From the IMG/VR virus record IMGVR_UViG_3300022200_000019, positions 124,001 to 188,000 of that record: a stretch of 64,000 nt of DNA; one strand, given 5' to 3'. Positions within the stretch are counted from its first letter, which is position 1. Every line of letters starts with the position of its first letter. Under the pieces are notes generated by a model. It did no database searches. It was not told the origin of the DNA and saw only the letters and a list, made by a program, of their open reading frames with translations. The position numbers were made by a program, and so were the translations under genes. This document shows positions 43,749-63,897 of the stretch, one piece after another.

Positions 43749-44732
43749 ATGAATTTAAAAGAACTAGATAGTTTTAAACTAGGCGATGCAGTTAACTTCC
43801 ACGAAGAACTAAATCCTGCTCTCTGGGAAAACGAAATGATGCGCTCAGACGTGCGCAAAGCACTGTTACGCATTGCCGCAGATTTCCAAGAGTTCTTAGG
43901 TGTTAAAGATCTAGCAGTAGAAGATGTTCGCGTTTCCGGGAGTAACGCAGCATATTCATATACGCCACATTCAGACATTGACTTACACTTGATTGTTGAC
44001 TTTGACCAAATCAACAACGATGAAGTGTATCAAGAGTTATTCAACGCAAAAAAGTTTCAATATAACCAAGAGCATAATATTAAAGTTCGTGGTTATGATG
44101 TAGAACTGTATGTTCAGGACGCAACCCAACCACACGCCAGTTTAGGTGAATATAGTGTAGCACGTGATGAGTGGACTCGCATTCCAACAAAGCAGCGTGC
44201 CAACCTAGACGATTTTGCAACACGTCAAAAATACGATAAACTCAAAGGCTTAGTTATGGCTGCGTTGGTTAGTAAAAAACTAAACATGGTAGATGACGTA
44301 ACAGATGTTGTTAAACGTTATCGTCGTGCTGGACTAGCAGAGGGTGGTGAGTTTAGCCCAGAAAATTTAGCATTCAAAATGTTACGTACTCAAGGTTATA
44401 TTGAAAGACTTTGGAAACATCGTAGTGAACTAGAAGATCGTGAACTTAGTTTAGAGCAAGCCGAATCTATTGTAGAAGCAGCAATACGCGAATTAGAATT
44501 ACATCAGGTATTAGCAGAAATGAAATTATCAGACTTTTTACCCAAAAAAACCCGAGAGCAAAATCAAGCAGATGAGCGTATGGCTATCGACGCAATGATG
44601 GTTTTAAGTACTTCAACTGAATACGCAATTGAAGATATTGTAAGGGCTGTAGAAGCGGCTTTAGAAACCGGAAAAGTTCACAATCGAAAAGATCTTTTAC
44701 AAATGGCGGCAGATATATTAGAAAAACAATGA
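43749..44732 (+). CDS. Pol-beta-superfamily nucleotidyltransferase
   Basis: SGSNAAYSYTPHSDIDLH, YDVELY. Confidence 0.8.
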   Translation: MNLKELDSFKLGDAVNFHEELNPALWENEMMRSDVRKALLRIAADFQEFLGVKDLAVEDVRVSGSNAAYSYTPHSDIDLHLIVDFDQINNDEVYQELFNAKKFQYNQEHNIKVRGYDVELYVQDATQPHASLGEYSVARDEWTRIPTKQRANLDDFATRQKYDKLKGLVMAALVSKKLNMVDDVTDVVKRYRRAGLAEGGEFSPENLAFKMLRTQGYIERLWKHRSELEDRELSLEQAESIVEAAIRELELHQVLAEMKLSDFLPKKTREQNQADERMAIDAMMVLSTSTEYAIEDIVRAVEAALETGKVHNRKDLLQMAADILEKQ

Positions 44733-46093
44733 AAGACTTTCACGTACTAGCATTAAGTAACGATAATGGAGTAAGAACCTACGCTATTCTAGCAGGCGAA
44801 AAACCCATTGGCCGTGCTGTGCGCAAGGGCAAAGAAATTGCGTTTCAAGTAACCGGATATCCTCCGCAACGAGAACACGGTAGTAACGTAGAACGTATTA
44901 TCGCCAAATGGTTAGATAGTCATTATGTTGACTTACAAGAAGGTGATGTAATATTACATCCTCGTTTTAAAGCACAGCAACAAGAAAAAGAAAGACTTGA
45001 TCAACTGATTGCTGACTATCAAAAACAAGCTGCTGCCGAAGAAGCTGATTTAAAAAGATTAGCAACTTTTTGGTGGAATAACGACGAAAGTCCAGAGGTT
45101 GAACAACTACTGGCACGCATGGGTTGGGAAATCGGCCAAGATGAAGGATATGATGACGAGCCCGGAGCATTTGTAGTACAGATAGGCGACGAAGATGGTG
45201 ACAGCTTTCTTTCTTGGTCGCCGGATGATTTAAGAAACAATGTAACAGAAGGCGACGTTGTTAAACACAAATTTGGACTAAAGCAACAACAAAAGAATAA
45301 AACCAAATATCGTTTTTATCAAGAAATCAAAGACGATATTCCTGTATTTGATCGCGGCAGATATGCGGCTGTAAAGCCACGATACATTGCGTCGCACAGA
45401 CATCCGGAAAACCTAGAACCATTTGATCACTTTGAAGTAGAACCAAGTAATTCGGGAGCCAATGGCAGAATAATTGGCATTACCCGAGACGGGATGCGAG
45501 TATTAGCCGATGTGTCGAGACTAGCACATGCAGAAGCATTCGCTGATGCGTGGAACAGAGGTGGATTTTCTGATAAAGATCCTAGTCGAGAACCGCTGGA
45601 TACATTAGAAAGTCGCCGTTCAAGTGCAGCACTAAAAGGGATTAATCTAGCAGAGAATCCAACAAACGAAGCTGGGTACGAAAGTTCTTGGCAAAAGCGT
45701 TATAGAACAGATCCGGAATTCCGCGAGCGTCAAAAACAAAACGAACGCAATCGCAGAAAGAATCCAGAATACGCAGAGAAGAAACGCGAATACCAACGCG
45801 AGCGTTCACGTAAGTTATATGCTGATCCAGACTGGCGCAAAGAAGACCTAGCAAGACGCAGAGATGTGTATGCTGCTAACAAAGACGCAGTATTAGCCAA
45901 ACGTCGTGAGTTAATGAAAGATCCAGCATATGCTGCTCGTAAAGCAGAATATTGGAAACAAGACGCTGCTAAACGTAAAGAATTAACACAAAAGTTCCAA
46001 CAGTTATTACAGGATCCAGATTTTAACCCTGCTAAACTACCAACAGCAGAACTTAAAAAGTTTATTAAATTTTTAGAAAAAGGAAGAGTATAA
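44729..46093 (+). CDS. Modular hypothetical protein (candidate head polyprotein)
   Basis: Repeated (L/V)xE-GDV junctions; charged helical C-terminus. Confidence 0.75.
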   Translation: MKDFHVLALSNDNGVRTYAILAGEKPIGRAVRKGKEIAFQVTGYPPQREHGSNVERIIAKWLDSHYVDLQEGDVILHPRFKAQQQEKERLDQLIADYQKQAAAEEADLKRLATFWWNNDESPEVEQLLARMGWEIGQDEGYDDEPGAFVVQIGDEDGDSFLSWSPDDLRNNVTEGDVVKHKFGLKQQQKNKTKYRFYQEIKDDIPVFDRGRYAAVKPRYIASHRHPENLEPFDHFEVEPSNSGANGRIIGITRDGMRVLADVSRLAHAEAFADAWNRGGFSDKDPSREPLDTLESRRSSAALKGINLAENPTNEAGYESSWQKRYRTDPEFRERQKQNERNRRKNPEYAEKKREYQRERSRKLYADPDWRKEDLARRRDVYAANKDAVLAKRRELMKDPAYAARKAEYWKQDAAKRKELTQKFQQLLQDPDFNPAKLPTAELKKFIKFLEKGRV

Positions 46094-46770
46094 TGTCATC
46101 ATTGAACGAAGATCCAATTAGAGATCTACTAAACAAGTTATTTGGTAAAAAGTCCGACGCACCTACTGCGGATACCGGATCGGAAGATAATATGGACAAT
46201 GCTGCTAATACCGGTGACATTACTCCAGGTCAAAGTTATAGTAGCGCAGCATCATTTGCTGACAAATATGATCGTAGCCCGATTAAAACATATGACTTAC
46301 CTCCTTCAGATGTAAAAGCAGCGAATCCTCCGGGAACAGAGAACGAGCCTTTTGACATTGACGCTATGAATAAAGCAGATTCTTTAAGAAATCTATTTAA
46401 AAGAGATGAGCCAAGAAAGCCTGTTACTGTTAAGAACGTTGAACCTAAGAAACCAGGCGAATATACTGGTGTTACAAAAGCAGTCGACGATGCTGCAACA
46501 TGGGTTGGAGATAAAGTAGATCAAGGTTGGGGTGCTGTTAAAGATTTCTTCAATGAACCAAGCACACCAGAACCAGCAGCAGATGATGAATCCGGTTGGT
46601 TAGACGGTGTTGTTGATCGCTATAAAAGATTCTATGGCGTCGGCGACAAGGAAGCAGAAACTCCTAAACCTGCGTCTAAGCCAGCAGATAGCGATGCTGC
46701 TAGATCAGCCAACGACGCACTAAACAGACTAATGGCAGATCCAGAATTTAGAAAGATGTTGGATCAATAA
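46093..46770 (+). CDS. Low-complexity candidate internal head protein
   Basis: MSSLNE-DP leader; D/K/P/A-rich. Confidence 0.7.
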   Translation: MSSLNEDPIRDLLNKLFGKKSDAPTADTGSEDNMDNAANTGDITPGQSYSSAASFADKYDRSPIKTYDLPPSDVKAANPPGTENEPFDIDAMNKADSLRNLFKRDEPRKPVTVKNVEPKKPGEYTGVTKAVDDAATWVGDKVDQGWGAVKDFFNEPSTPEPAADDESGWLDGVVDRYKRFYGVGDKEAETPKPASKPADSDAARSANDALNRLMADPEFRKMLDQ

Positions 46771-48662
46771 TGAACCTTTACGATCTATTTGAAGCCTTAG
46801 TTGGTCATGACATGCCTCGCAGCAAGAAATATAGCAGCGATCAGTCTGACTTTGAAATACAGCCGCAACTAGGTGAATTAATAGATCGTATCGAAGCAGG
46901 CGAAATCAAACCTAAAATTGTAAAACTAAACCCACAGAAATTACAAGCAACGCAAGGATGGCTAGATACTCGCAATGGTGGCGGTGCGCCATTGCTAGAT
47001 CGCTATACAAAATTACCTGTTATTCTTAAAGATCAATCAGGATATCATATCTTAGACGGGCACCATAGAACATCCCACGCTCTTAGTAAAGGACAACAAT
47101 CGATTAAAGTTTATCTATTTCGCATGCCCGACGATTTAAGCGAAGCATCGTTTGCTGATTTAAAGAAACTGGTTCCTGTGTATAATGTTGATGAATGGTC
47201 ACAAGAATTAGGTATTCCACGTAAGGTAGCATACTTATACGGCGAACTTGGTTACTTACAACGCGGCAAACCAGAACAGATTATGGTTAAAGTTCAACAT
47301 TTTATGGGCGGTGGCGGAGTTGTTCCGTTTTGCTTAGAACACGTAGGTGACTTGTCAGATCGTATGACACCTAGACATCCATTACATTGGAGTTATGGTG
47401 CTGTAAAAGAAAAAGCAGAAAAAACATACAGATCGTTAACACACAGTTATGGATTTGAGCGCGAGTTCCAAGAGAACCTAGACGCTACAATCGAATATCA
47501 AAAGATTGAAAATCCAGATGAGTATCGTGAGCGTGTATATCGTGCTATGCAAATGTATGCCGATGCACATAAAGAATTGCTTCCATACTGCCACACAGAT
47601 ATTCACAAGAATGCTGTATATGCTGCTATCTCATTGGGTGAAAGAAAGTTTGATGATGCTGCTACCTTTGTAGGTGCAATCAAACGTCTTTGTGCTAGCG
47701 AAGAAAGTTATCACAATGCGCTAAGAGCATATGATAAAAAACTAGATGGCAAACTAGCAGGCGAAGAAGTACTAGACGAAGCGGGCGAATGGTGGAAAAC
47801 ATTTTCAGATGTAGTTTCTGGATCAAAAAAAGCATATGATACCGCAGTTATTGCTGGTCCCAAATGGCAAGCAGCAATTGATAGCAAAGATCCAGTTGTA
47901 ATTGATCAAGGTATTAAAGACTTAGCAAAAGACTTAGGTATGGATCCAAACGATCCAAAATACAAGCAATGGGCAGGCAGTATGCGTTACAAAGCATACA
48001 AAGCAGCGGATATTAAACACGATGTAACACGAGATGCTGAACGTAAAGCCTATGCTGCTGATCCACGACACTGGAAGGAACTTGAAATTCCCGGTTATGA
48101 TGAACCCTGGGTTACATTTAGTAAGCCATCCCCACGTGGTATTCCGCTTCGTGTAGGCGGTGACAAAGTAGATGAAGAGGCTCTTGACCGTTTTGAGATA
48201 GGCATGGGATTAGAGCAGATGCATAACAATGACATTGCTCTTGTTGGTGGCATGCGTTCAGGATCAAGCCCTGCTAACTTAACACGTTTAAAATATAGCA
48301 TTTATGATGTTCCTATGCTAAAACAACTAAAGCAAACAGGTGGCAATCAAAATGACGCACTCATGGGCCATGTTGAATTAATGGTAGAAGATGGCACAGG
48401 CGATCTTATTGGTTTAATTAACATCGAAATGAAGCGCGGCGGCAAACGCCAAGGTTACGGCTCACAAGTTGTGCGTTCTATTATTGATAGTCCGTTTGCT
48501 CGCAAGCCATTTAGAATCTACGATATACAAAAGAAAGCTGTGGGTTTTTGGAAGAAGATGGGTGTAGAGTTTACACACTCAGACTTTAAAACTCCTATTG
48601 CGCCGACTCAGCTGCCCAGGCTTGCATTGGGACCAGGGAATATATTTGGAATCATACGATGA
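46770..48662 (+). CDS. ParB/Srx-like + GNAT acetyltransferase modular protein with CTS-like leader
   Basis: MNLYDLFE; LQATQ...PVILK...ILDGHHR; KRQGYGSQVV...AVGFWKKMG. Confidence 0.75.
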   Translation: MNLYDLFEALVGHDMPRSKKYSSDQSDFEIQPQLGELIDRIEAGEIKPKIVKLNPQKLQATQGWLDTRNGGGAPLLDRYTKLPVILKDQSGYHILDGHHRTSHALSKGQQSIKVYLFRMPDDLSEASFADLKKLVPVYNVDEWSQELGIPRKVAYLYGELGYLQRGKPEQIMVKVQHFMGGGGVVPFCLEHVGDLSDRMTPRHPLHWSYGAVKEKAEKTYRSLTHSYGFEREFQENLDATIEYQKIENPDEYRERVYRAMQMYADAHKELLPYCHTDIHKNAVYAAISLGERKFDDAATFVGAIKRLCASEESYHNALRAYDKKLDGKLAGEEVLDEAGEWWKTFSDVVSGSKKAYDTAVIAGPKWQAAIDSKDPVVIDQGIKDLAKDLGMDPNDPKYKQWAGSMRYKAYKAADIKHDVTRDAERKAYAADPRHWKELEIPGYDEPWVTFSKPSPRGIPLRVGGDKVDEEALDRFEIGMGLEQMHNNDIALVGGMRSGSSPANLTRLKYSIYDVPMLKQLKQTGGNQNDALMGHVELMVEDGTGDLIGLINIEMKRGGKRQGYGSQVVRSIIDSPFARKPFRIYDIQKKAVGFWKKMGVEFTHSDFKTPIAPTQLPRLALGPGNIFGIIR

Positions 48663-49120
48663 GAGCAAACGAATTTATCAGCGAAATTAACCTAGATCCA
48701 CGCTCGTGGTTTGGTGCTGGACAAATGGGTGGCCGTGGAGGCAGTGGCTCTCAAGCAGTTGCTACTGGCGGACGCACAGCACCAGCAACCGCCAAACCAA
48801 ATCTAGGTAAATTTGAACGTACACCAGATGGAAAGATCATTGATCCACAAGGACAGGTAGTTAATCCACGCACAGGCGATCCGTATACAAAAGCAGACGT
48901 AACCAGAGACACTGGTAAGAGTCCAGAGTTTAAGAGTATATCTCCAGAGCGTTCACACTATGCTAGAACTACACAAGCAGACCGTGTTAGAGACGAACGT
49001 GCTGCACGCAACATGGAACGTTATGCCGATGAATACCAAGCAGCAAAAACTAGATGGCAAGAAAAAGGTGATGCTGCTTCATTTGGCGATATGATAAAGA
49101 TTCTAAACAGAGTAGATTAA
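48659..49120 (+). CDS. CTS-leader hypothetical protein
   Basis: MRANEFISE; Gly-rich. Confidence 0.75.
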   Translation: MRANEFISEINLDPRSWFGAGQMGGRGGSGSQAVATGGRTAPATAKPNLGKFERTPDGKIIDPQGQVVNPRTGDPYTKADVTRDTGKSPEFKSISPERSHYARTTQADRVRDERAARNMERYADEYQAAKTRWQEKGDAASFGDMIKILNRVD

Positions 49121-49353
49121 TGCGTGAATTGAGATATAACACGGAAACATTAGGTTTTTCGTCACCAGACGATAGTTGTTATCTAGATCCCAGCGATCCT
49201 ATACACGAATTTCGTCGCACAGGCAATGCTGCTGCATTAAATCAACCACGACGTATTCCAGTTGCACAACAGTTTGCAGAACATGAACGTAAAATGGAAT
49301 TAGCAAAAGCACAGGGTATTCGTCCTGGTTCCCCAGCATGGTATATGTTATGA
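49120..49353 (+). CDS. Hypothetical protein
   Basis: DDSCYLDPSDPIHE...GIRPGSPAW. Confidence 0.7.
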   Translation: MRELRYNTETLGFSSPDDSCYLDPSDPIHEFRRTGNAAALNQPRRIPVAQQFAEHERKMELAKAQGIRPGSPAWYML

Positions 49354-50174
49354 AAGTATCAGAAATTATTTGCGAAGGCACTGGTATCGACCAGCACATC
49401 GCGCCGGAATTATTGCAACAACAAGTAAATCAAATCATTGATGCTATTAAAGCAGGCGGTTATTTGTTAACGGATGCTGATAAAGCCTTGCTCGATTATG
49501 CACGTAAACAAAAAATCTATCATCCAGATGAAATTGCGAATAACAAATTCCATAAATCAATAATCGCATCTGTTAAGCCGTTGCTAAAAAAAATAGAACA
49601 GCTATGGTCTGAACCACGCGATATAACCAGTGATGTTGAAGCAATTATTGGTGAGCCTATTCTTACCCTTCATCAAAAAATAAAACCATTGCTTGCAAAT
49701 CCTAATAGACAACCAATGGATTATGTTGTGCGAGCAAACTTAACACAATTATTAATTGCTGCTGCATGCCCAAAAAACAATGGCACTTGGGATACCAGCA
49801 CAGCCAAATGCTATTCAAACAATTATCCTTGGATATTAGATCAGGTGAAGGAAAAGTATCGTGCTAAAGACAGAAAACGCCGTGCCAACATGACTCCAGA
49901 TGAAAGAGAAGAGGTTCAGGCTAAAGACAGAGAATATCAGCAACAAAGACGGGATACCATGACTCCAGCTGAAAGAGAAGAGTATTTGGCTTACGACAGA
50001 GAACGGAAACGTAACCGTCTTGCCAACATGTCTCCAGCTGAAAGAGAAGAGTATCGGGCTAAACATAGAGAATATTACCAACAGTGGACGGCTAACATGT
50101 CTCCAGCTAAAAGAGAAGAGTATTTGGCTAAAAAAAGAGAACGGCAACAACGGCGGAAGGCCAAGAAAAAATGA
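49350..50174 (+). CDS. CTS-leader protein with 23-aa charged repeats
   Basis: MKVSEIICE; ATG 49350. Confidence 0.75.
   Translation: MKVSEIICEGTGIDQHIAPELLQQQVNQIIDAIKAGGYLLTDADKALLDYARKQKIYHPDEIANNKFHKSIIASVKPLLKKIEQLWSEPRDITSDVEAIIGEPILTLHQKIKPLLANPNRQPMDYVVRANLTQLLIAAACPKNNGTWDTSTAKCYSNNYPWILDQVKEKYRAKDRKRRANMTPDEREEVQAKDREYQQQRRDTMTPAEREEYLAYDRERKRNRLANMSPAEREEYRAKHREYYQQWTANMSPAKREEYLAKKRERQQRRKAKKK
49890..50165 (+). repeat. 4 x 69-bp coding tandem repeat
   Basis: ATG(A/T)CTCCAG(A/C)T(G/A)AAAGAGAAGAG... = M(T/S)P(A/D)(E/K)REE...RE. Confidence 0.9.
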
Positions 50175-50374
50175 AAGTATCAGAAATCATCAACGAAGGT
50201 GTAGGACGTATTACGCCGCAAAACCAAACACAGGATGTCGGTCCTGATCAAGTTTCTATTGAAGCAAAGAAATTAGGTTTTAAAGTAGATCGGGATGGTC
50301 GCCCACCACTTTTAAGTTCAAACGCAAAGAAAAACACAAATCCTAACACACTATTCAATCTTGGCATAAATTAA
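50171..50374 (+). CDS. Small CTS-leader protein
   Basis: MKVSEIINE-GVGRIT... Confidence 0.75.
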   Translation: MKVSEIINEGVGRITPQNQTQDVGPDQVSIEAKKLGFKVDRDGRPPLLSSNAKKNTNPNTLFNLGIN

Positions 50375-50377
50375 TAC

Positions 50378-56129: not shown

Positions 56130-56166
56130 AATTAAAATTCATTCCTATATTGCGAAATGTATCTAT

Positions 56167-56194
56167 ATTATACACAATGCTAATCTAATGTCAA
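56167..56194 (-). promoter_or_regulatory. Sigma70-type promoter of the reverse operon
   Basis: TTGACA-16 bp-(TG)TATAAT on the - strand. Confidence 0.75.
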
Positions 56195-56221
56195 CCATTA
56201 ATTTTGTTGCATAAATACAAC

Positions 56222-56491: not shown

Positions 56492-56509
56492 TACCCGCAT
56501 AAATAGTAG

Positions 56510-57835: not shown

Positions 57836-59166
57836 GAGCTCGTGAATTTATCGTAGAATATAAACGCGACATTACCATGAAAAACTGGTACGACAAGATC
57901 TTACGGCAACAAATGGTCGATAAAACCTACACCACACACGCTCAAAATGAAATCAGAGATTGGCTGGAAAAACGTGCTCGAGGAGAACTAACTCAACTTG
58001 AACAAGAGTTGTTAGATCAATCAGTCGAAATGATAGTAAGACAATTTGAATCTGCAGATCCAAGTCCAAACAAACAGTATGTACAATGGATGTTGCGTAT
58101 TTGGACCAATCCAAATGGTGTTGGCAGAATCGAAGATGTTACGTCCACAACAGCAGAAATGCTACACAAGTACCACGAACTAAAACAACGCAATCGTTTG
58201 CCTATTGACATTCGCGACATTAACCAGGTTAAGGATATGCGAACACTGGAAAAGTTGCACGATGATGTGGATCGTTTATATGCATTACTAGATAAAGATA
58301 AAATAGCAGCAATGCCAAAAGGCTCTGCTCGTGAAGTATATAACGGACCAGATTTTAGACTTATCGTTCCAGAAGATGAAGCAGCCGCTTGTTATTATGG
58401 CCAAGGAACACGCTGGTGTACGGCAGCAACCAAGGGTCATAATATGTTTGATCACTATAGTAAGGCTGGCCCTATCTACATTCTCATTCCTAAAAAGCCA
58501 GAGTATGAAGGTGAAAAATATCAATTACACGGCGCATCACGCCAATCAATGGATGAACGAGATCAGCCATACTATATTGGTAATTTACTTGGCAGATTCC
58601 CTGAGCTAAAAGAAATATTATTTTCTACTGATGATTTTTATAGTTGGGTTGAGATAATGCCGGATGCTTTTGTTGAGGATGGCGTTGCTACCTGGAATGC
58701 GTATGCTGCGAAACATTTTAAAGAATGGGGTCTAACACAAGTATTGACTGGTTGGACGCGAACTGCTAAGAATCGCGGCGAGATTGTGGATGTACAAAAA
58801 ACCTGGGAAAAGGTTAGAAAAGTATTGCTTGACTTGCTAGCAAATAGCGAAGTTTCAGTAGCAGACTTTTATGATGCTGCTACACAGACGCACATCAAAG
58901 GCGATACTGGTGCTACAGATGCTGAAAATGAGTTTGCTCGAATACTTTCATATGCGTGGAAGTATAACCTGATAGAAGCGTTAAAAGCCGGTTATCTGGG
59001 TGTGAATGCTAAGGTTAGTTTAGAACATCCTGAATGGGATATTACAGTTCGTGTAATAGATTCTGAAGCGAACGCCTGGAAAGATTCCACTGCCGAGTGG
59101 AGCAATGACGAGGGCTGGGAATTCTCCATTAATGATCCCGAAGATACTCGCTACAATGAGGACTAA
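57832..59166 (+). CDS. CTS-leader paralogue 2
   Basis: MRAREFIVE; DPSPNKQYVQW, ACYYGQGTRWCTA. Confidence 0.85.
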   Translation: MRAREFIVEYKRDITMKNWYDKILRQQMVDKTYTTHAQNEIRDWLEKRARGELTQLEQELLDQSVEMIVRQFESADPSPNKQYVQWMLRIWTNPNGVGRIEDVTSTTAEMLHKYHELKQRNRLPIDIRDINQVKDMRTLEKLHDDVDRLYALLDKDKIAAMPKGSAREVYNGPDFRLIVPEDEAAACYYGQGTRWCTAATKGHNMFDHYSKAGPIYILIPKKPEYEGEKYQLHGASRQSMDERDQPYYIGNLLGRFPELKEILFSTDDFYSWVEIMPDAFVEDGVATWNAYAAKHFKEWGLTQVLTGWTRTAKNRGEIVDVQKTWEKVRKVLLDLLANSEVSVADFYDAATQTHIKGDTGATDAENEFARILSYAWKYNLIEALKAGYLGVNAKVSLEHPEWDITVRVIDSEANAWKDSTAEWSNDEGWEFSINDPEDTRYNED

Positions 59167-59168
59167 AT

Positions 59169-60485
59169 GTGAGAGCCAAAGAGTTTTTATTAGAATATAA
59201 CAGAGACATCACCAAAAAGAACTATGGTGACAAGATTGTTCTGCGCTGGGGCGTGGGAGCTGTTAGCAGTGGATTAAGCATTCGCCGTGTACACGACAAG
59301 ATTCTTGCTGGCGAACCATTGGATGCCAACGAACAAAATGTTTATGATGAAGCAGTTGCTAACATTATTAACAAAGCAGAAATTGCTGACCCAACTCCAA
59401 ACAAACAATATGTACAGTGGCTTGTTCGTGCGTGGATCAATAAACTGCTAAGACTTGCTGAAGATATTCTTTCATCAGGCAGTGAGTTTGTTAAAATGTG
59501 GCACGAGTTAAAAACTCACCGTATGCTACCGCCAAATTACACAGACATTAACAGAATTAAAACACCGAGCGATTGGAATCAGGCCTGGGTGGATATTCGA
59601 GCAGCATACGAAAACTTCAAACCCAAGAAGCCAATGCCCAAAGGCAAGGCACGTGAACTGTTAAACAATGCGGAAGTAAGAATCGTTCGCCCAGAAAATG
59701 AAGCAGCGGCTTGCTATTACGGACAAGGCACACAGTGGTGTACGGCTGCTACAGAAACACGCAACTTGTTTGATCATTATCACAAAGATGGCGATCTAAG
59801 TATCTTTATTCCTAAGAATCCACGGTACGAAGGTGAAAAATATCAACTGTGGGTCAATAACGACACTGGTGGATATCAGTTAATGAACGAACAAGACGAT
59901 CCACTTGAATACGGCCTAGAAGAACTAACAGACAGATTTAATACATTAACTTATGAGATTTTAGAAAAACTACATCCAGCACTAATGAAACATCCTGAAT
60001 TTAACACTGAAGAATTTGAGTCAGTTAAACGGCAAATTGCTGTTAACCTATTCAAAAATGGATACTTCAAATTAGCATATAGCGATCTAATTAATATGCT
60101 TGATGATTCATTTGACGAATACGACAAAGATTCCATTAATTATATGAAAGAAATGTTTATGGAAATGGAAGCTGAAGTGTTGCGAGCTATTAACAATGTT
60201 GGATACGATGAACTCGCATTTAATGATCCTGGTGTAACATTCCCTGAGTTACCCAATGCTGTATTTAGATGGCTTGAATACATGACTGATGACACCAACA
60301 TGTGGGGCGATTGGGCTGACGACGAATATATGGTAGGCTTTATCAGCAACATTGAAGCCTGGTTTAACAGACAAACAAATTGGGACAAGCGTAATCAGAA
60401 TCAAACTCTGATACCGTACTACAGCATCAAACAAGACGAAAAAACTGGAAAGTGGGAAGTAGAGTACGAAGGCCCGTGGACATGA
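59169..60485 (+). CDS. CTS-leader paralogue 3
   Basis: (GTG)RAKEFLLE; DPTPNKQYVQW, ACYYGQGTQWCTA. Confidence 0.85.
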   Translation: MRAKEFLLEYNRDITKKNYGDKIVLRWGVGAVSSGLSIRRVHDKILAGEPLDANEQNVYDEAVANIINKAEIADPTPNKQYVQWLVRAWINKLLRLAEDILSSGSEFVKMWHELKTHRMLPPNYTDINRIKTPSDWNQAWVDIRAAYENFKPKKPMPKGKARELLNNAEVRIVRPENEAAACYYGQGTQWCTAATETRNLFDHYHKDGDLSIFIPKNPRYEGEKYQLWVNNDTGGYQLMNEQDDPLEYGLEELTDRFNTLTYEILEKLHPALMKHPEFNTEEFESVKRQIAVNLFKNGYFKLAYSDLINMLDDSFDEYDKDSINYMKEMFMEMEAEVLRAINNVGYDELAFNDPGVTFPELPNAVFRWLEYMTDDTNMWGDWADDEYMVGFISNIEAWFNRQTNWDKRNQNQTLIPYYSIKQDEKTGKWEVEYEGPWT

Positions 60486-61885
60486 GAGCAAACGATTTAA
60501 TTTTTGAATACAAGCGTGACGTAACCGTAAAGAATTATACTGACAGACTGATTGATCGTATGATCAGCGATGGCAGTGTCGAACGTATGACGTTTGGCGG
60601 CAATGGATGGGGTTACACCACAGATGATATGTTTGATATGGTTCGCGGCATTCAGTGGCAGAATCAACCGCCGTTGACTCCAGAAAAAGTAGAAGCAGCC
60701 AAGGAAATATTTGCGAGAGGTGCTATTACACAAATTGAGCAAGCAGATCCTACCAGTAAAAAAGCCTACACAGAATGGTTGGTAATGGCATATATCAACA
60801 GTATATTTGTGCGTTGGGAAGACATATTCTCAACTGGAACTGATTTCTTAGCAATGTATAACGACCTAAAGCAACGCAACTTATTTAATAAAGTCGATAC
60901 TCTTAAAGCAGTATCAAACATTAAACAAATCAACAATCGCGAAAGATTTAGATGGGCATATACTACAATTTCAAACGCACACGATTTTTATCTCGGTCAA
61001 ACCACAGACATTGATCGCGGCGATGCTGAAGAAATCCACAACGGACCAGAAGTTCGTGTACTAAAAGTAAACGATCAAAAAGCAGCGTGTTATTATGGAC
61101 GCGGCACAGAATGGTGTACAGCAGCAACACGTTCTCGCAATATGTTTGATCACTATAACCGTACTGGAAACATATACATATTCATTCCTAAAAAGCCACA
61201 GCACGACGGTGAAAAATATCAGTTCTGGGCAGGCGACGATGGGCGCAACGTTGATATTCAACTAATGGACGAACACGACGAGCCAGTAGATTTTGAAACC
61301 TGGGACAATCGTTTTCCAGGATTGGGCATCAAATACTTGTATGATCTTGAACCTAAGGTATTGAGTCAGTTTGTTATGTTTAACCGAAAGCGATTTGATT
61401 ATATCATAGCCGAAGTTGTTGAACTTTTACAAAACAACTGGAAATGGGATGTCGTTGCTGACTGGGAGCATGACGATGATTATTATTGGCAATGGTTGCG
61501 TGACGAAGGTTACATAGATGACGAAGGCGACTTTGATGATGATAAAATGGAAAAAGACGGCATAAACTATCTAGAGTTTAACGACGATTTGCGCCGAGGA
61601 CTAAACGACGTGTTTGACGCTTTTGAAGAACTTACACCGTCAGAACTCAATAATTTTTATAGTGATGACAATGGTGGACCATTGGACTTCTACCGTATGA
61701 TTGATACCTTAGGTGACTGGATAGAAGATCAAGCCGGCAGTCACTATGAAAGTTTATTCAAAGATGCCGGTAATTTCATTGCCAATAATATTGGCAGTTA
61801 CTCAGATAAGGAAGGTAACTTTAAGGTAGATCATGTTGCTAATATTCGCGGTACACCTTATCTAGCGCATCCAGCTAGACGATAA
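60482..61885 (+). CDS. CTS-leader paralogue 4
   Basis: ATG 60482, MRANDLIFE; DPTSKKAYTEW, ACYYGRGTEWCTA; acidic C-terminus. Confidence 0.85.
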   Translation: MRANDLIFEYKRDVTVKNYTDRLIDRMISDGSVERMTFGGNGWGYTTDDMFDMVRGIQWQNQPPLTPEKVEAAKEIFARGAITQIEQADPTSKKAYTEWLVMAYINSIFVRWEDIFSTGTDFLAMYNDLKQRNLFNKVDTLKAVSNIKQINNRERFRWAYTTISNAHDFYLGQTTDIDRGDAEEIHNGPEVRVLKVNDQKAACYYGRGTEWCTAATRSRNMFDHYNRTGNIYIFIPKKPQHDGEKYQFWAGDDGRNVDIQLMDEHDEPVDFETWDNRFPGLGIKYLYDLEPKVLSQFVMFNRKRFDYIIAEVVELLQNNWKWDVVADWEHDDDYYWQWLRDEGYIDDEGDFDDDKMEKDGINYLEFNDDLRRGLNDVFDAFEELTPSELNNFYSDDNGGPLDFYRMIDTLGDWIEDQAGSHYESLFKDAGNFIANNIGSYSDKEGNFKVDHVANIRGTPYLAHPARR

Positions 61886-61915
61886 ACTAAATACTATATC
61901 AAAGAGAAAAATATC

Positions 61916-62494
61916 ATGAACTTATCCGAAGAACTCAGAAAATATGCCAATATCTTAAATGAAGAACGCACAGACGAATACTTTGATTATGGCGACGATG
62001 CCGATACCAGCAATGAACCAGCAGGTATGCCGTTTTATAAACTGCCTGCAAAAAGTTCAGCAGTAAAAATCACAAATAAAGCGCACCAAGCCGGACTAAA
62101 CACAGTTGAGTTTCAAGGACAATATCTGAGTGTTTCGCCTAACCAAGCCGATCGGCTGGAAGAACTAATGCGTGCCATGCGCATGCAGTTTACGCCGGTA
62201 ACGGGTGTTCCTGATTGGGGTGCAGATGATTCACATCTAAGTCGCAAAGAACGTGCTCGTGGCATGCCATATAAATTTAGCGAAAACAAATCGGTAATTC
62301 GTAAAAGATTTCCCAAATTAGAAAAAGCAATTATTCAAGATCAAGATCCAGAGTTGGCATCTCTGTATGCCATAAAGGTAATCGGAGGCAGATGGCCCGA
62401 AGCAGAACCAGTGATTGCCAAAGATTCAGAGTCGGCATCTCTGTATGCCCGATATATACTCAAAGGTCCTTGGCCCGAAGCAGGGATCAAATGA
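61916..62494 (+). CDS. Candidate head protein with 26-aa C-terminal repeat
   Basis: MNLSEELRKYANILNE; ASLYA..(V/I)..G(R/P)WPEA x2. Confidence 0.75.
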   Translation: MNLSEELRKYANILNEERTDEYFDYGDDADTSNEPAGMPFYKLPAKSSAVKITNKAHQAGLNTVEFQGQYLSVSPNQADRLEELMRAMRMQFTPVTGVPDWGADDSHLSRKERARGMPYKFSENKSVIRKRFPKLEKAIIQDQDPELASLYAIKVIGGRWPEAEPVIAKDSESASLYARYILKGPWPEAGIK

Positions 62495-62904
62495 GAGCAA
62501 GAGAATTCACATCTGAAGCAGATATGACACGTAGAGATTTTCTCAAACGTGCAGCAGCAACACTGGCAGCACCAGCAGTAGCAAAGGCTGGTCCTCCGGT
62601 TAGTGACGAAACTACCCAAGCAGTTGATCTAGCACAAGATCCAAACTGGATGCCACTATACAAAGACGGCGAACCAGTTACTGCTCCTCCATATGCTCAA
62701 GAGTTATATGGCAAGGGTTATCCAAAAGATACAGATTATCGTCCCGTTGATCCAATTGATTCGTTTGAAAAAGACCCAGACGTTCAGAGATTCTATGATC
62801 TCAAAGCAAAACGTTGTTTGGCAAACCGTGGCACACCAGTAAAGGATGCGCAAGGTAACATAGATTGTACGCAAGTACGTGGTAAAGCATCGCAAACATG
62901 GTAG
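62491..62904 (+). CDS. CTS-leader protein with Tat signal
   Basis: ATG 62491; MRAREFTSE-ADM-TRRDFLK-RAAATLAAPAVAKA. Confidence 0.8.
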   Translation: MRAREFTSEADMTRRDFLKRAAATLAAPAVAKAGPPVSDETTQAVDLAQDPNWMPLYKDGEPVTAPPYAQELYGKGYPKDTDYRPVDPIDSFEKDPDVQRFYDLKAKRCLANRGTPVKDAQGNIDCTQVRGKASQTW

Positions 62905-62910
62905 AGGTTG

Positions 62911-63150
62911 ATGGGAAAGATATTAAAATTTCCAACTGAAAAAACTTTTACTTGTATGCTGCCAGACGACTGGGCAGACCCAGAAAACCCTACGCAATAC
63001 GAAATCGCTAACACAATGCGCACATTACGTCAGATGATGACAGAGTGCGAAAAAGAATATCACAAAACACAATCCCCTGCGTTAACTGTACAAATCAATA
63101 AAATTAAATCCTGTATACAGTTAATGTACAGTTATTATCGCTCAGACTAA
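62911..63150 (+). CDS. Hypothetical protein
   Basis: SD GAGG; MGKILKFP. Confidence 0.65.
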   Translation: MGKILKFPTEKTFTCMLPDDWADPENPTQYEIANTMRTLRQMMTECEKEYHKTQSPALTVQINKIKSCIQLMYSYYRSD

Positions 63151-63190
63151 CCTGTATAAATATTTTTAACATGTAGCACAGGAGTCTACC

Positions 63191-63430
63191 GTGAGCGATG
63201 ATATCTTTGACGACATTGAACTCACAGGCATTGAACGCTTTAATAGCCACTTGAACGAGGATATCAAAGACCGTGCCTATCGCTATGTTACACATAGTCC
63301 AGAGTACCACAGAGTACCTCTTAGCGAACTCAGAAGAATACGCAGCAAAGCAAAAAAACTAAAAAGAAGCTATAAAAAACAACAACGCAAGCAATCTCAA
63401 GACATTTCCAAACGCTACGGCGGTCGTTGA
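63191..63430 (+). CDS. Basic hypothetical protein
   Basis: TATAAATA 63155, SD AGGAG, GTG start. Confidence 0.7.
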   Translation: MSDDIFDDIELTGIERFNSHLNEDIKDRAYRYVTHSPEYHRVPLSELRRIRSKAKKLKRSYKKQQRKQSQDISKRYGGR

Positions 63431-63449
63431 TTACTAGCATAAATACTGT

Positions 63450-63770
63450 ATGAAAGATACAGTATTCGTAAAACTCTGTGTGGATTTACACTGTGACTGG
63501 CAGGGGTTGCCACCAGATTACCGTATCTATGTGGACAATGAATTGTTTGCTGAACGCACTTATCGTTGGGAAAAACCTGTATACCTGACAGAAATTCTTC
63601 AGATTAATGCAGTGCCTGACACAGAATATCTGGTCACACTGGACGATTTTGCACCACAGATTGCAAATTTCAAGATGTCAAACCACAGAGTTGAATATTG
63701 TGACTTGCCTGTGGAATTTAACAAGTGTAAAGACAAAAAATTTAGGTTTAAAGTTAAAAATGAAAGTTAA
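63450..63770 (+). CDS. Hypothetical beta-rich protein
   Basis: TAAATA 4 nt upstream; YRIYVDNELFAERTY. Confidence 0.75.
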   Translation: MKDTVFVKLCVDLHCDWQGLPPDYRIYVDNELFAERTYRWEKPVYLTEILQINAVPDTEYLVTLDDFAPQIANFKMSNHRVEYCDLPVEFNKCKDKKFRFKVKNES

Positions 63771-63897
63771 TGAGATAATTTCAGAAATGACCAGTGCTGG
63801 TGCTGTTGCCGCAGTAGCGCAACCATTAGGCGGCACAATTAGTCGTAACCAGGGCGTATATACCAAACCAAAAAAGAAAAAGAAGGGTAAAAAATGA
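63760..63897 (+). CDS. 45-aa CTS-leader basic peptide
   Basis: MKVNEIISE-MTSAGAVAAVAQP...KPKKKKKGKK; ATG 63760. Confidence 0.7.
   Translation: MKVNEIISEMTSAGAVAAVAQPLGGTISRNQGVYTKPKKKKKGKK

What the first reader, a model, noticed from the sequence alone, without database searches (positions are those of the whole stretch)
43749..63897. Cassette of candidate capsid-packaged, co-injected proteins sharing a T4 CTS-like leader
Seen: at least 13 genes in 20 kb start with a related short leader ending in Glu. Examples: MRANEFISE (48659), MRATEFLTE (56222), MRARDFILLE (56510), MRAREFIVE (57832), MRAKEFLLE (59169), MRANDLIFE (60482), MRAREFTSE (62491), MKVSEIICE (49350), MKVSEIINE (50171), MKVNEIISE (63760), MNLYDLFE (46770), MNLNDILNE (52863), MSSLNE (46093). 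The downstream sequences are otherwise unrelated (except the four paralogues), and similarity is visible at DNA level (ATGAGAGC..., ATGAAAGT...). Established: T4 internal proteins carry a 10-aa capsid-targeting sequence (MKTYQEFIAE) removed by prohead protease gp21 after Glu in hydrophobic-X-E sites; T4 IPI and Alt are packaged, injected and act on the host. Inference: this phage packages a large, enzymatically diverse arsenal (GNAT, ParB-like, kinase-like, KTSC, Tat-signal modules, possibly the nucleotidyltransferase) for delivery with the DNA, for example for anti-defence or host takeover.
Basis: partly seen in the sequence, partly recalled or inferred. Interest (0 to 1): 0.9.

Follow-up and report, generated by a model that had tools for sequence, protein, structure and literature searches.

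The report
Shared capsid-targeting leader on phage cargo genes
An uncultured 213-kb T4-related jumbo phage puts the same nine-residue N-terminal tag, very like the tag phage T4 uses to load proteins into its head for injection, on 13 mostly unrelated genes in one cassette. The same tag fronts about 70 unrelated protein families in related phages, so it may offer a simple way to list candidate injected proteins.

Summary
Twelve of the 13 listed genes, plus one just beyond the window, start with M-[RKN]-[AVLF]-x-[DE]-[FLI]-[ILFT]-x(0-2)-E. There is no other strict match in any frame of the 155 kb (73%) of the genome I read; shuffles give 0.06.

Only the four 440-aa paralogues are related to each other. 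A matrix trained only on distant metagenomic homologues of those paralogues ranks three unrelated cassette genes 3rd to 5th of 8,752 start peptides. Its five-residue core puts T4 ipIII, ipII and gp24 first in 53 kb of T4.

In 77 related viral contigs, 257 ORFs carry the leader (0-2 in shuffles). With this phage's 13 they form 73 cargo clusters, including a superoxide dismutase and a GH19 hydrolase. In three contigs leader genes lie beside portal, S77 protease and Gp23 capsid genes. A PA5oct homologue is a mass-spectrometry virion protein.

Best reading (about 0.7): a T4-type capsid-targeting propeptide cut after Glu by the prohead protease. This is a known mechanism, here in a new lineage and on a larger scale.

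New detail: two proteins have a canonical Tat signal directly after a hydrophobic-x-Glu site.

Not shown: packaging, cleavage, injection, or this genome's own protease.

The parts
46770..48662 (+). Leader gene, 630 aa. Leader MNLYDLFE. ParB-like DGHHR region (about nt 47007-47201) and a GNAT-like C-terminus (about nt 48183-48608).
   Evidence: Regex hit. Pfam ParBc_2 E=0.0086, below threshold. The C-terminal 142 aa are 42% identical to GNAT-annotated P0132. Eleven orthologues (57-100% identity) all keep the leader.
48659..49120 (+). Leader gene, 153 aa. Leader MRANEFISE. Basic (pI 9.6), Gly/Pro-rich and probably disordered.
   Evidence: The external matrix ranks it 4th of 8,752 start peptides. 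pI. ATGA overlap with the previous gene.
49350..50174 (+). Leader gene, 274 aa. Leader MKVSEIICE. Basic (pI 9.6), with a Lys/Arg-rich repeat tail.
   Evidence: ATGA overlap with the previous gene.
50171..50374 (+). Leader gene, 67 aa. Leader MKVSEIINE. Basic (pI 9.8).
   Evidence: An orthologue with a leader is present in L227.
52863..55091 (+). Leader gene, 742 aa, multi-domain. In order: leader MNLNDILNE; a 50-aa KKVxGKWALVS module (nt 52881-53033); a protein-kinase-like domain (nt 53406-54032); a charged linker; a predicted internal cut after V-D-E566; a Tat signal (nt 54561-54638); and a C-terminal beta-rich domain.
   Evidence: Pfam TAT_signal E=0.00097 at aa 567-585. Sequence. All 13 orthologues keep the V-x-E | DLTRRDFLKG junction, although its position ranges from 356 to 569. 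Module context. AF2 model pLDDT 76; the top 50 PDB fold matches are all kinases or pseudokinases. An ATAAATA box lies 10 nt upstream of the ATG.
56222..56491 (+). Leader gene, 89 aa. Leader MRATEFLTE, followed at aa 16 by a second leader-like MNYQQFLVE. KTSC-like C-terminus.
   Evidence: ranks 3rd and 7th. Pfam KTSC E=1.3e-4, below threshold. JGI start. An ATAAATA box lies 7 nt upstream of the ATG.
56510..61885 (+). Four tandem paralogues: 56510-57835, 57832-59166, 59169-60485 and 60482-61885 (441, 444, 438 and 467 aa). Leaders are MRARDFILLE, MRAREFIVE, (V)RAKEFLLE and MRANDLIFE, each followed by a conserved Y-[KN]-R. The conserved core (AACYYGQGTRWCTA) has no known function.
   Evidence: Paralogy. 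A family of more than 778 metagenomic proteins keeps the N-terminus at 30-45% identity. The PA5oct homologue gp205 is annotated as a structural protein by ESI-MS/MS. AF2 pLDDT 88; residues 1-7 are disordered and the first helix starts at residue 12. No PDB fold match; BFVD hits include the PA5oct structural protein and a weak PcfJ-like match.
62491..62904 (+). Leader gene, 137 aa. Leader MRAREFTSE, directly followed by a canonical Tat signal (TRRDFLK, a hydrophobic stretch, then A-K-A; nt 62518-62589).
   Evidence: Pfam TAT_signal E=0.001. The orthologue in L269 (46% identity) keeps both the leader and the Tat signal. JGI start.
63760..63897 (+). Leader gene, 45 aa. Leader MKVNEIISE. Very basic (pI 10.9) with a Lys-rich tail.
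   Evidence: JGI start. Orthologue in L269.
43749..46770 (+). Three upstream genes without the leader: 43749 (nucleotidyltransferase-like), 44729 and 46093. They sit in the same + strand block, downstream of an ATAAATA box at 43735. Whether they are cargo is not established.
   Evidence: No regex or matrix hit. Pfam NTP_transf_2 E=0.0076, below threshold; phrog_36119 E=2.6e-43. Box.
50378..52852 (+). Low-GC (0.34) island of three genes without leaders: SGNH/GDSL-like, NAD-binding epimerase-like, and a 364-aa unknown. It interrupts the cassette and is probably not part of the system.
55079..55980 (-). Two minus-strand genes: a 110-aa signal-peptide protein and a 189-aa lipoprotein with a weak retropepsin-like hit. 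They interrupt the cassette and are not part of the system.
43735..63445 (+). ATAAATA boxes (the core of the T4 late-promoter consensus) ending 3-8 nt before the ATG of genes 43749, 52863, 56222, 56510 and 63450. They start at 43735, 52849, 56211, 56499 and 63439 and head the cassette's transcription blocks.
   Evidence: Nine such sites in the window against 3.35 expected; none of 100 shuffles reached 9. All are on the + strand and eight sit at predicted gene starts.

Best explanation
The nine-residue N-terminus (consensus M-R-A-[RKN]-E-F-[LI]-x-E, with MKV/MKI and MNL variants) is a T4-type capsid-targeting propeptide. Proposed steps, all inferred by analogy with T4:

1. The genes are expressed late.
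2. The leader binds the scaffolding core, so the cargo is built into the prohead.
3. The S77 (gp21-family) prohead protease cuts after the Glu, with a hydrophobic residue at P3. This frees the mature cargo inside the head. The same kind of cut would also occur at internal hydrophobic-x-Glu junctions of the multi-domain members.
4. The cargo leaves the head with the DNA at the next infection.

The cassette between the ClpA-like gene and the DNA polymerase is a variable region where new cargo is recruited simply by acquiring the leader.

Shown here: the motif, its confinement to this cassette, its modular attachment to about 70 unrelated cargo families, its likeness to the T4 leaders, and its linkage to T4-type head genes in relatives.
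For: Specificity in this genome:
- 13 strict matches, all at gene starts within 18.6 kb, and none elsewhere in six frames of 155 kb. That stretch holds RNR, ligase, helicases, UvsX, DNA polymerase, clamp loader and Clp genes.

Independent recognition:
- A matrix trained only on 26 N-termini of distant external homologues of the paralogues ranks the unrelated genes 56222, 48659 and 62491 3rd to 5th of 8,752 start peptides (19-24 bits). The best hit outside the cassette scores 4.2 bits.
- The five-position core of that matrix, run over 53 kb of T4 (2,130 start peptides), ranks ipIII, ipII and gp24 first to third.
- Published T4 mutagenesis puts targeting at residues 4 and 7 and processing at residues 8 and 10 of the 10-residue leader (PMC9026906). 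Aligned from the Glu, T4 residues 7, 8 and 10 correspond to the F, L/I and E that are most conserved here.

Modularity:
- 257 leader ORFs in 77 related IMG/VR loci against 0-2 in shuffles. 249 of them are on the family's strand and 217 lie at ORF beginnings, with up to 12 in one locus.
- Together with this phage's 13 they form 73 cargo clusters, 41 of them singletons.
- A Fe/Mn superoxide dismutase carries the leader as an 11-residue graft: its residue 15 aligns with residue 4 of PDB 1ues.
- MRA-, MKI- and MNL-type leaders alternate within single cargo families and in front of the same KWALVS module.

Links to the head:
- In L254, L267 and L279 leader genes lie 1.3-2.6 kb downstream of a portal - S77 protease - scaffold - Gp23 capsid module.
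- Two contigs hold both leader arrays and a Gp23-type capsid gene.
- PA5oct gp205, a homologue of the paralogues, is annotated as a virion protein by ESI-MS/MS, and PA5oct encodes an S77 protease.

Expression and accessibility:
- ATAAATA boxes, the core of the T4 late-promoter consensus, head the cassette's transcription blocks.
- The AF2 model leaves residues 1-7 disordered ahead of the first helix.

Internal junctions that fit the same cut site:
- V-[DAE]-E directly before a Tat signal in all 13 orthologues of gene 52863.
- [LIV]-x-E-[TY]-L before 12 of the 13 internal copies of the KWALVS module (13th: V-N-E-M-L).
Against: - There are no proteomic or N-terminal data for this phage or for any phage with this exact leader.
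- No S77 protease, Gp23 capsid protein or portal was found in contig positions 51,476-206,847. They must lie in the unread 57 kb, but that is an inference.
- The PA5oct homologue aligns only with residues 64-246, and its own N-terminus fits the motif poorly.
- The cargo has no sequence relation to T4 internal proteins, and no PHROG 'internal virion protein' family was hit.
- Four of the 13 proteins are large (630, 742 and about 440 aa) and acidic, unlike the small basic T4 internal proteins.
- The conserved hydrophobic-x-Glu before internal modules could be part of those modules' fold rather than a cleavage site.
- The ATAAATA box lies so close to the ATG that its role as a promoter is itself uncertain.
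Confidence: 0.7

Rival explanations
1. The targeting is right but the purpose is different. The leader loads proteins into the prohead, but most cargo serves head assembly or DNA condensation, as proposed for T4 IPIII and the basic internal proteins. It would not be an injected anti-defence or takeover arsenal.
For: - Five of the 13 proteins are small or disordered and basic, several with Lys/Arg-rich tails (48659, 49350, 50171, 63760; pI 9.6-10.9).
- The T4 literature assigns IPIII a role in head morphogenesis and reports that the internal proteins contact DNA through lysines (PMC9026906; PMC3012670).
- In some relatives the genes sit inside the head module.
Against: - The cargo includes enzyme-like domains with no obvious assembly role: kinase-like, GNAT-like, superoxide dismutase and GH19.
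- A related polyvalent protein with a leader-like N-terminus (outside the motif) carries an Acb1 anti-CBASS domain.
- Content varies from phage to phage and 41 of 73 clusters are singletons. That pattern is typical of conflict genes, not of assembly parts.
Confidence: 0.12
2. The leader is a tag for the phage's own proteostasis machinery, serving as a degron or adaptor signal rather than a capsid address. The phage encodes ClpA-like, ClpX, ClpP, ClpS, DnaJ and HSP20 proteins.
For: - The ClpA-like gene lies 4.3 kb upstream of the first leader gene (40135-42453).
- ClpX, ClpP and ClpS are encoded elsewhere on the contig.
- The leader starts Met-basic-small or hydrophobic, loosely like some ClpX N-terminal recognition motifs (from my own knowledge, not tested).
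- In the paralogue family a Tyr follows the Glu. It would be a ClpS N-degron if exposed.
Against: - T4 has no Clp genes, yet its established leaders are the top hits of the matrix.
- PA5oct's homologue is found in virions.
- Leader genes sit in head modules in relatives.
- A degron does not explain hydrophobic-x-Glu junctions in front of a Tat signal.
- Whether the 77 relatives encode Clp proteins was not tested.
Confidence: 0.08
3. The similarity is a nucleic-acid feature. It could be a shared translation-initiation region, or a short homology used to shuffle cassettes by recombination, with no function as a peptide.
For:
- T4-type phages are known to shuffle genes at conserved promoter-terminator cassettes (PMC2839356 and PMC4122927, listed).
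- The region is a variable insert compared with Atu_ph07.
Against: - Conserved residues use varied synonymous codons: Ala GCA/GCT/GCC/GCG = 71/37/28/9, Arg by six codons, Phe TTT/TTC = 106/39.
- The upstream contexts differ: some leaders follow an ATAAATA box, others an ATGA overlap with the previous gene.
- The peptide is conserved across homologues that are only 30-45% identical.
- The same hydrophobic-x-Glu signature recurs inside proteins.
- 27 nt is too short for efficient homologous exchange (from my own knowledge).
Confidence: 0.04
4. The leader is an export-related N-terminal extension. These would be proteins made during infection and sent to the envelope, and the Tat-signal members are simply ordinary Tat substrates with a long n-region.
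For: - Gene 62491 has a textbook Tat signal beginning at residue 10.
- Tat n-regions can be long (from my own knowledge).
- Envelope-directed genes (a lipoprotein and a signal-peptide protein) lie nearby.
Against: - Eleven of the 13 leader proteins have no hydrophobic or Tat segment after the leader.
- The leader is acidic and short.
- In gene 52863 the Tat signal lies 566 residues from the N-terminus. It cannot work unless the protein is cut just before it, which points back to a Glu-specific protease.
Confidence: 0.04

Closest known systems
[quoted passage not shown]
   Same: - Short N-terminal leader on otherwise unrelated proteins.
- Met-basic-small start, an acidic-Phe-Ile/Leu-x-Glu core, hydrophobic P3 and Glu P1.
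- Preceded by the core of the late-promoter consensus.
- The phage has T4-type replication and chaperone genes.
- A matrix derived from this system ranks T4 ipIII, ipII and gp24 first.
   Different: - One residue shorter.
- 13 carriers in one genome against about 4 in T4, most of them in a single 19-kb cassette.
- Cargo up to 742 aa, often acidic and multi-domain.
- No sequence homology of the cargo to T4 internal proteins.
- Tat signals behind predicted cut sites.
- No experimental evidence, and this genome's protease has not been located.
Polymorphic internal-protein loci of T-even phages (Repoila et al. 1994, as cited in PMC3012670; PMC9026906 section 3.1)
   Same: A variable locus in which diverse, unrelated genes share only a conserved CTS-like leader. 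It is interpreted as an arms-race toolbox.
   Different: - Known from close relatives of T4 that infect enterobacteria, with small basic proteins.
- Here it occurs in a distant, uncultured jumbo-phage lineage related to PA5oct, Rak2 and Atu_ph07.
- It has about 70 cargo families and enzyme-sized cargo.
Head ejection proteins and propeptides of the giant phages phiKZ, 201phi2-1 and SPN3US (PMC5694885, PMC10052503)
   Same: - Jumbo phages with many internal head proteins, including paralogue families.
- Conserved N-termini among diverged paralogues.
- Protease cuts after Glu.
   Different: - Those propeptides are mostly longer than 100 residues, and the cut motif has a small residue (A/S/G)-x-E.
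- That lineage is not T4-like in replication.
- Here the leader is 8-10 residues with a hydrophobic P3, as in T4.
Polyvalent proteins of phages and conjugative elements (Iyer et al. 2017, PMC5512222)
   Same: - Multi-domain proteins combining ParB-like, GNAT, nucleotidase and other enzyme domains, predicted to be packaged and injected.
- Gene 46770 (ParB-like + GNAT-like) and gene 52863 (module + kinase-like + Tat domain) have this character.
- The KWALVS module of 52863 recurs inside 850-1,180-aa proteins that carry NT5C, GNAT, ParB, glucosaminidase and Acb1 domains.
   Different: That work predicted packaging from gene context and, in the passages I read, described no N-terminal targeting leader. 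Here an explicit leader and conserved hydrophobic-x-Glu inter-domain junctions suggest both the address and polyprotein-like processing.
Phage P1 Dar anti-restriction proteins packaged in the head (PMC9024508, PMC12810830; listed)
   Same: Defence-countering proteins are incorporated into the capsid during assembly and delivered with the DNA.
   Different: A different phage lineage and incorporation pathway. No shared sequence, and no short Glu-terminated leader is known to me. I did not test this.

Membership tests
T4-type CTS / internal-protein system | Short (about 7-20 aa) N-terminal leader ending in Glu, with a hydrophobic residue two positions before it | tested here: met
   13 genes match. 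The consensus from 210 relatives is M-R-A-x-E-F-[LI]-x-E.
T4-type CTS / internal-protein system | The leader is shared by proteins that are otherwise unrelated | tested here: met
   BLASTP all-against-all within the cassette. 73 cargo clusters among 270 leader proteins.
T4-type CTS / internal-protein system | Sequence likeness of the leader to the experimentally defined T4 leaders | tested here: met
   The externally trained core matrix ranks T4 ipIII, ipII and gp24 first to third of 2,130 start peptides. ipI and alt score low with this matrix.
T4-type CTS / internal-protein system | The genome encodes a gp21-family (Peptidase_S77) prohead protease and a Gp23-type capsid protein | tested here: inconclusive
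   Neither was found in contig positions 51,476-206,847, which is 73% of the contig. The remaining 57 kb could not be fetched. Both are present beside leader genes in relatives L254, L267 and L279 and in PA5oct. A gp31/GroES-like head-morphogenesis gene is in the window.
T4-type CTS / internal-protein system | Late expression | tested here: inconclusive
   ATAAATA boxes are enriched (9 against 3.35 expected) and head five cassette blocks. No transcript data exist, and the box lies unusually close to the ATG.
T4-type CTS / internal-protein system | The proteins are present in the mature head with the leader removed | not testable with these tools
   The only support is indirect: the PA5oct homologue gp205 is annotated as a structural protein by ESI-MS/MS, and the PA5oct paper did not analyse processing.
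T4-type CTS / internal-protein system | The leader is sufficient to package a foreign protein | not testable with these tools
   Needs a fusion experiment. The leader grafted onto a superoxide dismutase is a natural analogue, not a test.
T4 internal protein families (IPI, IPII, IPIII, Alt) by homology | Sequence homology of the mature protein | tested here: not met
   No PHROG or Pfam hit to internal virion proteins or Alt. The cargo families are new or uncharacterised.
Polyvalent proteins (Iyer et al. 2017) | Two or more domains of disparate biochemical activity in one polypeptide of a phage or conjugative element | tested here: met
   Gene 52863 has a KWALVS module, a kinase-like fold, a Tat signal and a C-terminal domain. 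Gene 46770 combines ParB-like (weak) and GNAT-like regions. Most other cassette members have one domain or are disordered, so the cassette as a whole is not a set of polyvalent proteins.
Tat (twin-arginine) export substrates | N-terminal S/T-R-R-x-F-L-K motif, then a hydrophobic stretch and an A-x-A site | tested here: inconclusive
   The motif is exact in 62491 (from residue 13) and in 52863 (from residue 569). Pfam scores are 19.4 bits against a cut-off of 22.7. In 52863 the signal is internal, so it is N-terminal only if the protein is cut.

The most novel reading that the evidence does not exclude
A capsid-to-periplasm relay. Cleavage after the leader Glu of gene 62491, and after the conserved internal V-x-E of gene 52863, would expose a canonical Tat signal at the new N-terminus inside the head. 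After injection into the next host's cytoplasm, the host Tat system would export these folded proteins to the periplasm. Injected phage proteins would then act on the envelope from the first minutes of infection.

A parallel possibility concerns the four paralogues. The same cut would give them an N-terminal Tyr, which is a ClpS/ClpAP N-degron, and so a built-in lifetime after injection.
Probability: 0.15. Interest if true: 0.85.

Novelty: new variant of a known kind. Interest (0 to 1): 0.62.

Why it matters
If the leader is a capsid address, a nine-residue pattern becomes a practical way to read out the injected proteome of a large uncultured group of jumbo phages. It already flags 270 proteins in about 70 families from 78 contigs.

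Proteins delivered with the DNA act before any phage gene is expressed, so they are good candidates for counter-defence and host-takeover functions. One related polyvalent protein with a leader-like N-terminus already carries an Acb1 anti-CBASS domain.

The finding would also extend the T4 packaging tag, used in the laboratory to load foreign proteins into heads, to a different and larger capsid. It would suggest that polyvalent proteins are processed like polyproteins at hydrophobic-x-Glu junctions.

The Tat signals behind predicted cut sites raise a testable idea that I did not find described in the T4-head and giant-phage reviews I read: routing of injected proteins to the periplasm.

Tried and rejected
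Locating this phage's own prohead protease and capsid gene failed, by several routes.
- I walked the source contig with all 12 encoding-contig look-ups. This covered positions 51,476-206,847. Two look-ups were lost on sister contigs or a variant protein.
- tblastn with T4 and PA5oct portal, protease, scaffold, capsid, sheath, tube and neck proteins found nothing in that stretch.
- Scans of IMG/VR with the PA5oct capsid protein and with a capsid alignment each returned 80 other contigs.
- An exact 36-mer showed that the contig is in IMG/VR as UViG_3300022200_000019, but it returned only 5.8 kb.
- Cluster look-ups of six capsid proteins, three from metagenomes with sample numbers near the sister contigs', found none on the 212,917-bp contig.

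Other searches that led nowhere:
- Megablast of the cassette and of a core region against cultured phages gave no match.
- tblastn of the first 27 residues of a paralogue against cultured phages gave no match.
- A profile of the paralogue family against PDB sequences, and its AF2 model against PDB folds, gave nothing significant.
- The Atu_ph07 interval between ClpA and the DNA polymerase holds no leader genes, so the cassette is lineage-specific.
- The CcrBL9 homologue of the paralogue core has no leader.

Rejected as members: 46093 (MSSLNE), 43749 and 61916 (MNL starts without the rest of the motif).

Considered and set aside: a DNA-level explanation, and an export-signal explanation for the leader itself.

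Full report
SOURCE AND SETTING

The window is positions 124,001-188,000 of a 212,917-bp metagenomic contig: JGI sample 3300022200, Ga0196901_1000001, also held as IMG/VR UViG_3300022200_000019. It has no near-identical relative among cultured phages.

Its proteins place it among jumbo phages with a T4-like core.
- The DNA polymerase is 42-50% identical to those of Sinorhizobium phage Phosso, Agrobacterium phage Atu_ph07, Vibrio phage 2.275.O and Rak2-like phages.
- The ClpA-like ATPase is about 40-45% identical to those of Phosso, Atu_ph07 and the PA5oct group.
- The window also holds a T4-type clamp loader, a gp31/GroES-like head-morphogenesis gene and baseplate or fibre genes.
- The gene order clamp loader ... 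DnaJ - ClpA - [interval] - DNA polymerase is shared with Atu_ph07. There the interval is 11 kb and has no leader genes; here it is 25 kb and holds the cassette.

THE OBSERVATION

A six-frame scan of all start codons with the pattern M-[RKN]-[AVLF]-x-[DE]-[FLI]-[ILFT]-x(0-2)-E finds 12 matches in the window. All are on the + strand between 46770 and 63760, and all are at gene starts. Shuffled sequence gives 0.06.

- Four of the starts are those chosen independently by JGI's gene caller. Six overlap the preceding stop codon as ATGA.
- A thirteenth member lies 1.4 kb past the window end.
- I joined overlapping, 100%-identical pieces of the contig into 155,372 bases, 73% of the genome. The strict pattern still hits only these 13.
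- That stretch includes ribonucleotide reductase, ligase, helicases, a RecA/UvsX homologue, DNA polymerase, clamp loader and a full Clp set.
- A looser pattern adds one gene at contig position 84,270, among unannotated genes next to a tailspike-like gene.
- One listed item, MSSLNE at 46093, is not a member.
- Only the four tandem genes in 56510-61885 are paralogues. The rest share nothing significant beyond the leader.

AN INDEPENDENT TEST OF THE MOTIF

The pattern above was fitted to the data, so I built a matrix from other sequences. The paralogue family has more than 778 metagenomic relatives. The 120 best listed, at 30-45% identity, almost all keep an N-terminus of the form MR[AYF]xE[FL][LI]xEY.

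- The matrix used 26 distinct N-termini of the distant relatives only. It ranks the unrelated cassette genes 56222, 48659 and 62491 3rd to 5th among 8,752 start-codon peptides (19-24 bits). The best peptide outside the cassette scores 4.2 bits.
- I fetched two T4 regions from the phage collection and scanned them with the five-position core of the same matrix. Among 2,130 start peptides the top three are ipIII, ipII and gp24.
- All three are N-terminal propeptides known to be removed by gp21. The ipIII leader is the capsid-targeting sequence defined by experiment, and the identical ipII leader is inferred to be one (PMC9026906; PMC5694885).
- T4 mutagenesis places targeting at residues 4 and 7 and processing at residues 8 and 10 of the 10-residue leader. 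Aligned from the Glu, T4 residues 7, 8 and 10 correspond to the Phe, Leu/Ile and Glu that are most conserved here.
- Conserved residues are encoded by varied synonymous codons, so selection acts on the peptide.

THE LEADER IS A MOVABLE MODULE IN A WHOLE GROUP OF PHAGES

An alignment of the paralogue family retrieved 77 further IMG/VR loci, 1.27 Mb in all.

- They contain 257 ORFs of at least 40 aa that start with the leader, against 0-2 in shuffles. Of these, 249 are on the same strand as the family member and 217 lie within 20 codons of the upstream stop. One locus has 12 in about 10 kb.
- With the first 12 residues removed, these 257 plus this phage's 13 fall into 73 clusters, 41 of them singletons.
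- Identifiable cargo includes a GH19 hydrolase and a Fe/Mn superoxide dismutase.
- The dismutase shows the principle plainly. Its residue 15 aligns with residue 4 of a solved bacterial enzyme, so the leader is an 11-residue graft on an ordinary enzyme.
- The core domain of the paralogues also occurs without any leader in the siphovirus CcrBL9.

LINKS TO THE HEAD

- In three retrieved loci (L254, L267, L279) the leader-bearing family member lies 1.3-2.6 kb downstream of a T4-type module: portal, Peptidase_S77 protease, scaffold and Gp23 capsid protein. In L267 it is followed by a second leader gene.
- Two large contigs hold both leader arrays and a Gp23-type capsid gene.
- In PA5oct, a homologue of the paralogues (gp205; 34% identity over residues 64-246) lies in an array of similar-sized genes, several of which, including gp205, are annotated as structural proteins by ESI-MS/MS. 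PA5oct also encodes an S77 protease 38% identical to T4 gp21. The PA5oct paper reports 93 virion proteins but did not analyse processing.
- The AF2 model of gene 57832 is confident (pLDDT 88) except at residues 1-7. These precede the first helix, as expected of an exposed peptide.
- ATAAATA, the core of the T4 late-promoter consensus, is enriched 3-8 nt upstream of start codons (9 observed, 3.35 expected). It heads five blocks of the cassette.

INTERNAL JUNCTIONS

Gene 62491 has, directly after its leader Glu, a textbook twin-arginine signal. Its 46%-identical orthologue keeps both elements.

Gene 52863 (742 aa) has the same Tat motif starting at residue 567, directly after V-D-E.
- All 13 orthologues keep V-[DAE]-E followed by DLTRRDFLKG.
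- The middle of the protein varies, so the junction lies anywhere from residue 356 to 569.
- An internal Tat signal is useless unless the chain is cut just before it. The cut site has the T4 protease signature.

A 50-residue module (KKVxGKWALVS...) shows the same pattern.
- It follows the leader in 52863 and in 960-1,000-aa proteins with an MRA-type leader.
- It also occurs inside 12 multi-domain proteins of 416-1,183 aa and near the N-terminus of a thirteenth, after [LIV]-x-E-[TY]-L in 12 of these 13 copies and V-N-E-M-L in the other.
- Those proteins carry nucleotidase, GNAT, ParB, glucosaminidase and, in one case, an Acb1 anti-CBASS domain above Pfam's threshold.
- This fits polyprotein-like processing of polyvalent proteins (PMC5512222). 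The conserved residues could instead belong to the module's fold.

WHAT THE CARGO IS IN THIS WINDOW

- 46770: a weak ParB-like region plus a GNAT-like C-terminus, 42% identical to a GNAT-annotated protein.
- 52863: the KWALVS module, then a protein-kinase-like fold (model pLDDT 76; the top 50 PDB matches are all kinases or pseudokinases, TM-scores only 0.3-0.5), then the Tat signal and a C-terminal domain.
- 56222: a sub-threshold KTSC hit and a second leader-like peptide at residue 16.
- The four paralogues: a confident model with no PDB match. It resembles only uncharacterised phage and giant-virus proteins, the PA5oct virion protein and, weakly, PcfJ-like proteins.
- 48659, 49350, 50171 and 63760: small or disordered and basic, like classical internal proteins.
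- The nucleotidyltransferase-like gene at 43749 has no leader.
- A low-GC three-gene island (50378-52852) and two minus-strand envelope genes (55079-55980) interrupt the cassette and are not part of it.

MECHANISM, RIVALS AND LIMITS

The best-supported reading (about 0.7) is a T4-type capsid-targeting propeptide:
1. late synthesis;
2. binding to the scaffolding core;
3. incorporation into the prohead;
4. cleavage after Glu by the S77 protease;
5. delivery with the DNA.

Every step after the sequence facts is inferred by analogy.

The main gap is that I could not find this genome's own protease or capsid gene. They are not in the 155 kb I read, and the other 57 kb could not be fetched with the calls allowed.

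Rivals:
- The cargo is packaged but serves assembly or DNA packing rather than host takeover (0.12).
- The leader is a tag for the phage's own Clp machinery (0.08).
- The similarity is a nucleic-acid feature (0.04).
- The leader is an export extension (0.04).

The last two are contradicted by codon variation and by the lack of any hydrophobic segment in most members.

COMPARISON WITH WHAT IS KNOWN, AND NOVELTY

The principle is established for T4 and its close relatives: diverse internal proteins that share only a conserved targeting leader. It has been called an evolutionary mechanism for recruiting proteins into the head (PMC3012670; PMC9026906). Giant phiKZ-like phages use much longer propeptides and a small-residue-x-Glu motif (PMC5694885).

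What is new here:
- the lineage, uncultured jumbo phages with a T4-like core;
- the scale, 13 carriers in one genome and about 70 cargo families in relatives;
- enzyme-sized and multi-domain cargo;
- the Tat signals placed behind predicted cut sites.

I rate it a new variant of a known kind with interest 0.62. It is well above ordinary, because the motif gives a usable handle on the candidate injected proteome of a large uncultured phage group.

Noticed in passing
window 8614, 36739, 39825, 43735, 52849, 56211, 56499, 63156, 63439 (+ strand): ATAAATA, the core of the T4 late-promoter consensus, ends only 3-8 nt before an ATG. There are 9 sites against 3.35 expected, and 8 are at predicted gene starts with no Shine-Dalgarno sequence in between. 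If these are promoters, the transcripts would be leaderless or nearly so. Otherwise the box may be a translation-initiation signal.
   Followed up: partly
window 22492-22902, 39070-39828, 40135-42453; contig positions about 97.8-100.7 kb (L101) and about 117.8 kb (L090): An unusually full phage-encoded proteostasis set: GroES/gp31-like, DnaJ and ClpA-like in the window; ClpX, ClpS, HSP20 and ClpP elsewhere on the contig. A ribosomal protein S21 gene is also present.
   Followed up: no
L101:12185-19114 (contig positions about 101-108 kb): Curli-type secretion genes on a phage genome: CsgF, CsgG, a FecR-domain protein and a weak curlin-repeat protein. A CHASE2-guanylate cyclase (680 aa) follows them.
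   Followed up: no
window 56510-61885 and alignments A1, A3: In the paralogue family Glu9 and Tyr10 are invariant or nearly so (E9 >=90%, Y10 invariant in the 41-row A3). Cleavage after Glu9 would leave an N-terminal Tyr, a bacterial N-degron read by ClpS/ClpAP, and this phage itself encodes ClpS and a ClpA-like protein.
   Followed up: partly
window 52881-53033; P0187-P0207: A 50-residue module (KKVxGKWALVS...QYYHG) with no Pfam match recurs at 55-77% identity (38-45% in two) inside large multi-domain phage proteins. These carry NT5C, GNAT, ParB, glucosaminidase, cytidylyltransferase and Acb1 domains.
   Followed up: partly
window 50378-52852: A low-GC (0.34) island of three genes sits inside the cassette: SGNH/GDSL-like, NAD-binding epimerase-like, and a 364-aa unknown. 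It looks like a separately acquired sugar- or envelope-modifying set.
   Followed up: no
window 55079-55980 (- strand): The only minus-strand genes in the cassette: a lipoprotein with a weak retropepsin-like (Zn_protease) hit and a small signal-peptide protein. They may be envelope or exclusion functions.
   Followed up: no
L221:3883-4221 (contig position 84,270): A 112-aa gene starting MNIRDIIRE is the only leader-like start outside the cassette in the 155 kb read. It sits among unannotated genes upstream of a pectate-lyase-fold, tailspike-like gene.
   Followed up: no
L003-L007, compared with window 53,450-64,000: Sister contigs from other samples carry the same cassette with small differences: genes of 94 vs 89 aa, 414 vs 441 aa and 479/490 vs 485 aa, one 64-aa gene absent, and a second 79-aa gene. 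The cassette varies within the population.
   Followed up: partly
window 9281-9354: A single tRNA-Trp (CCA) gene lies among small early-type genes.
   Followed up: no
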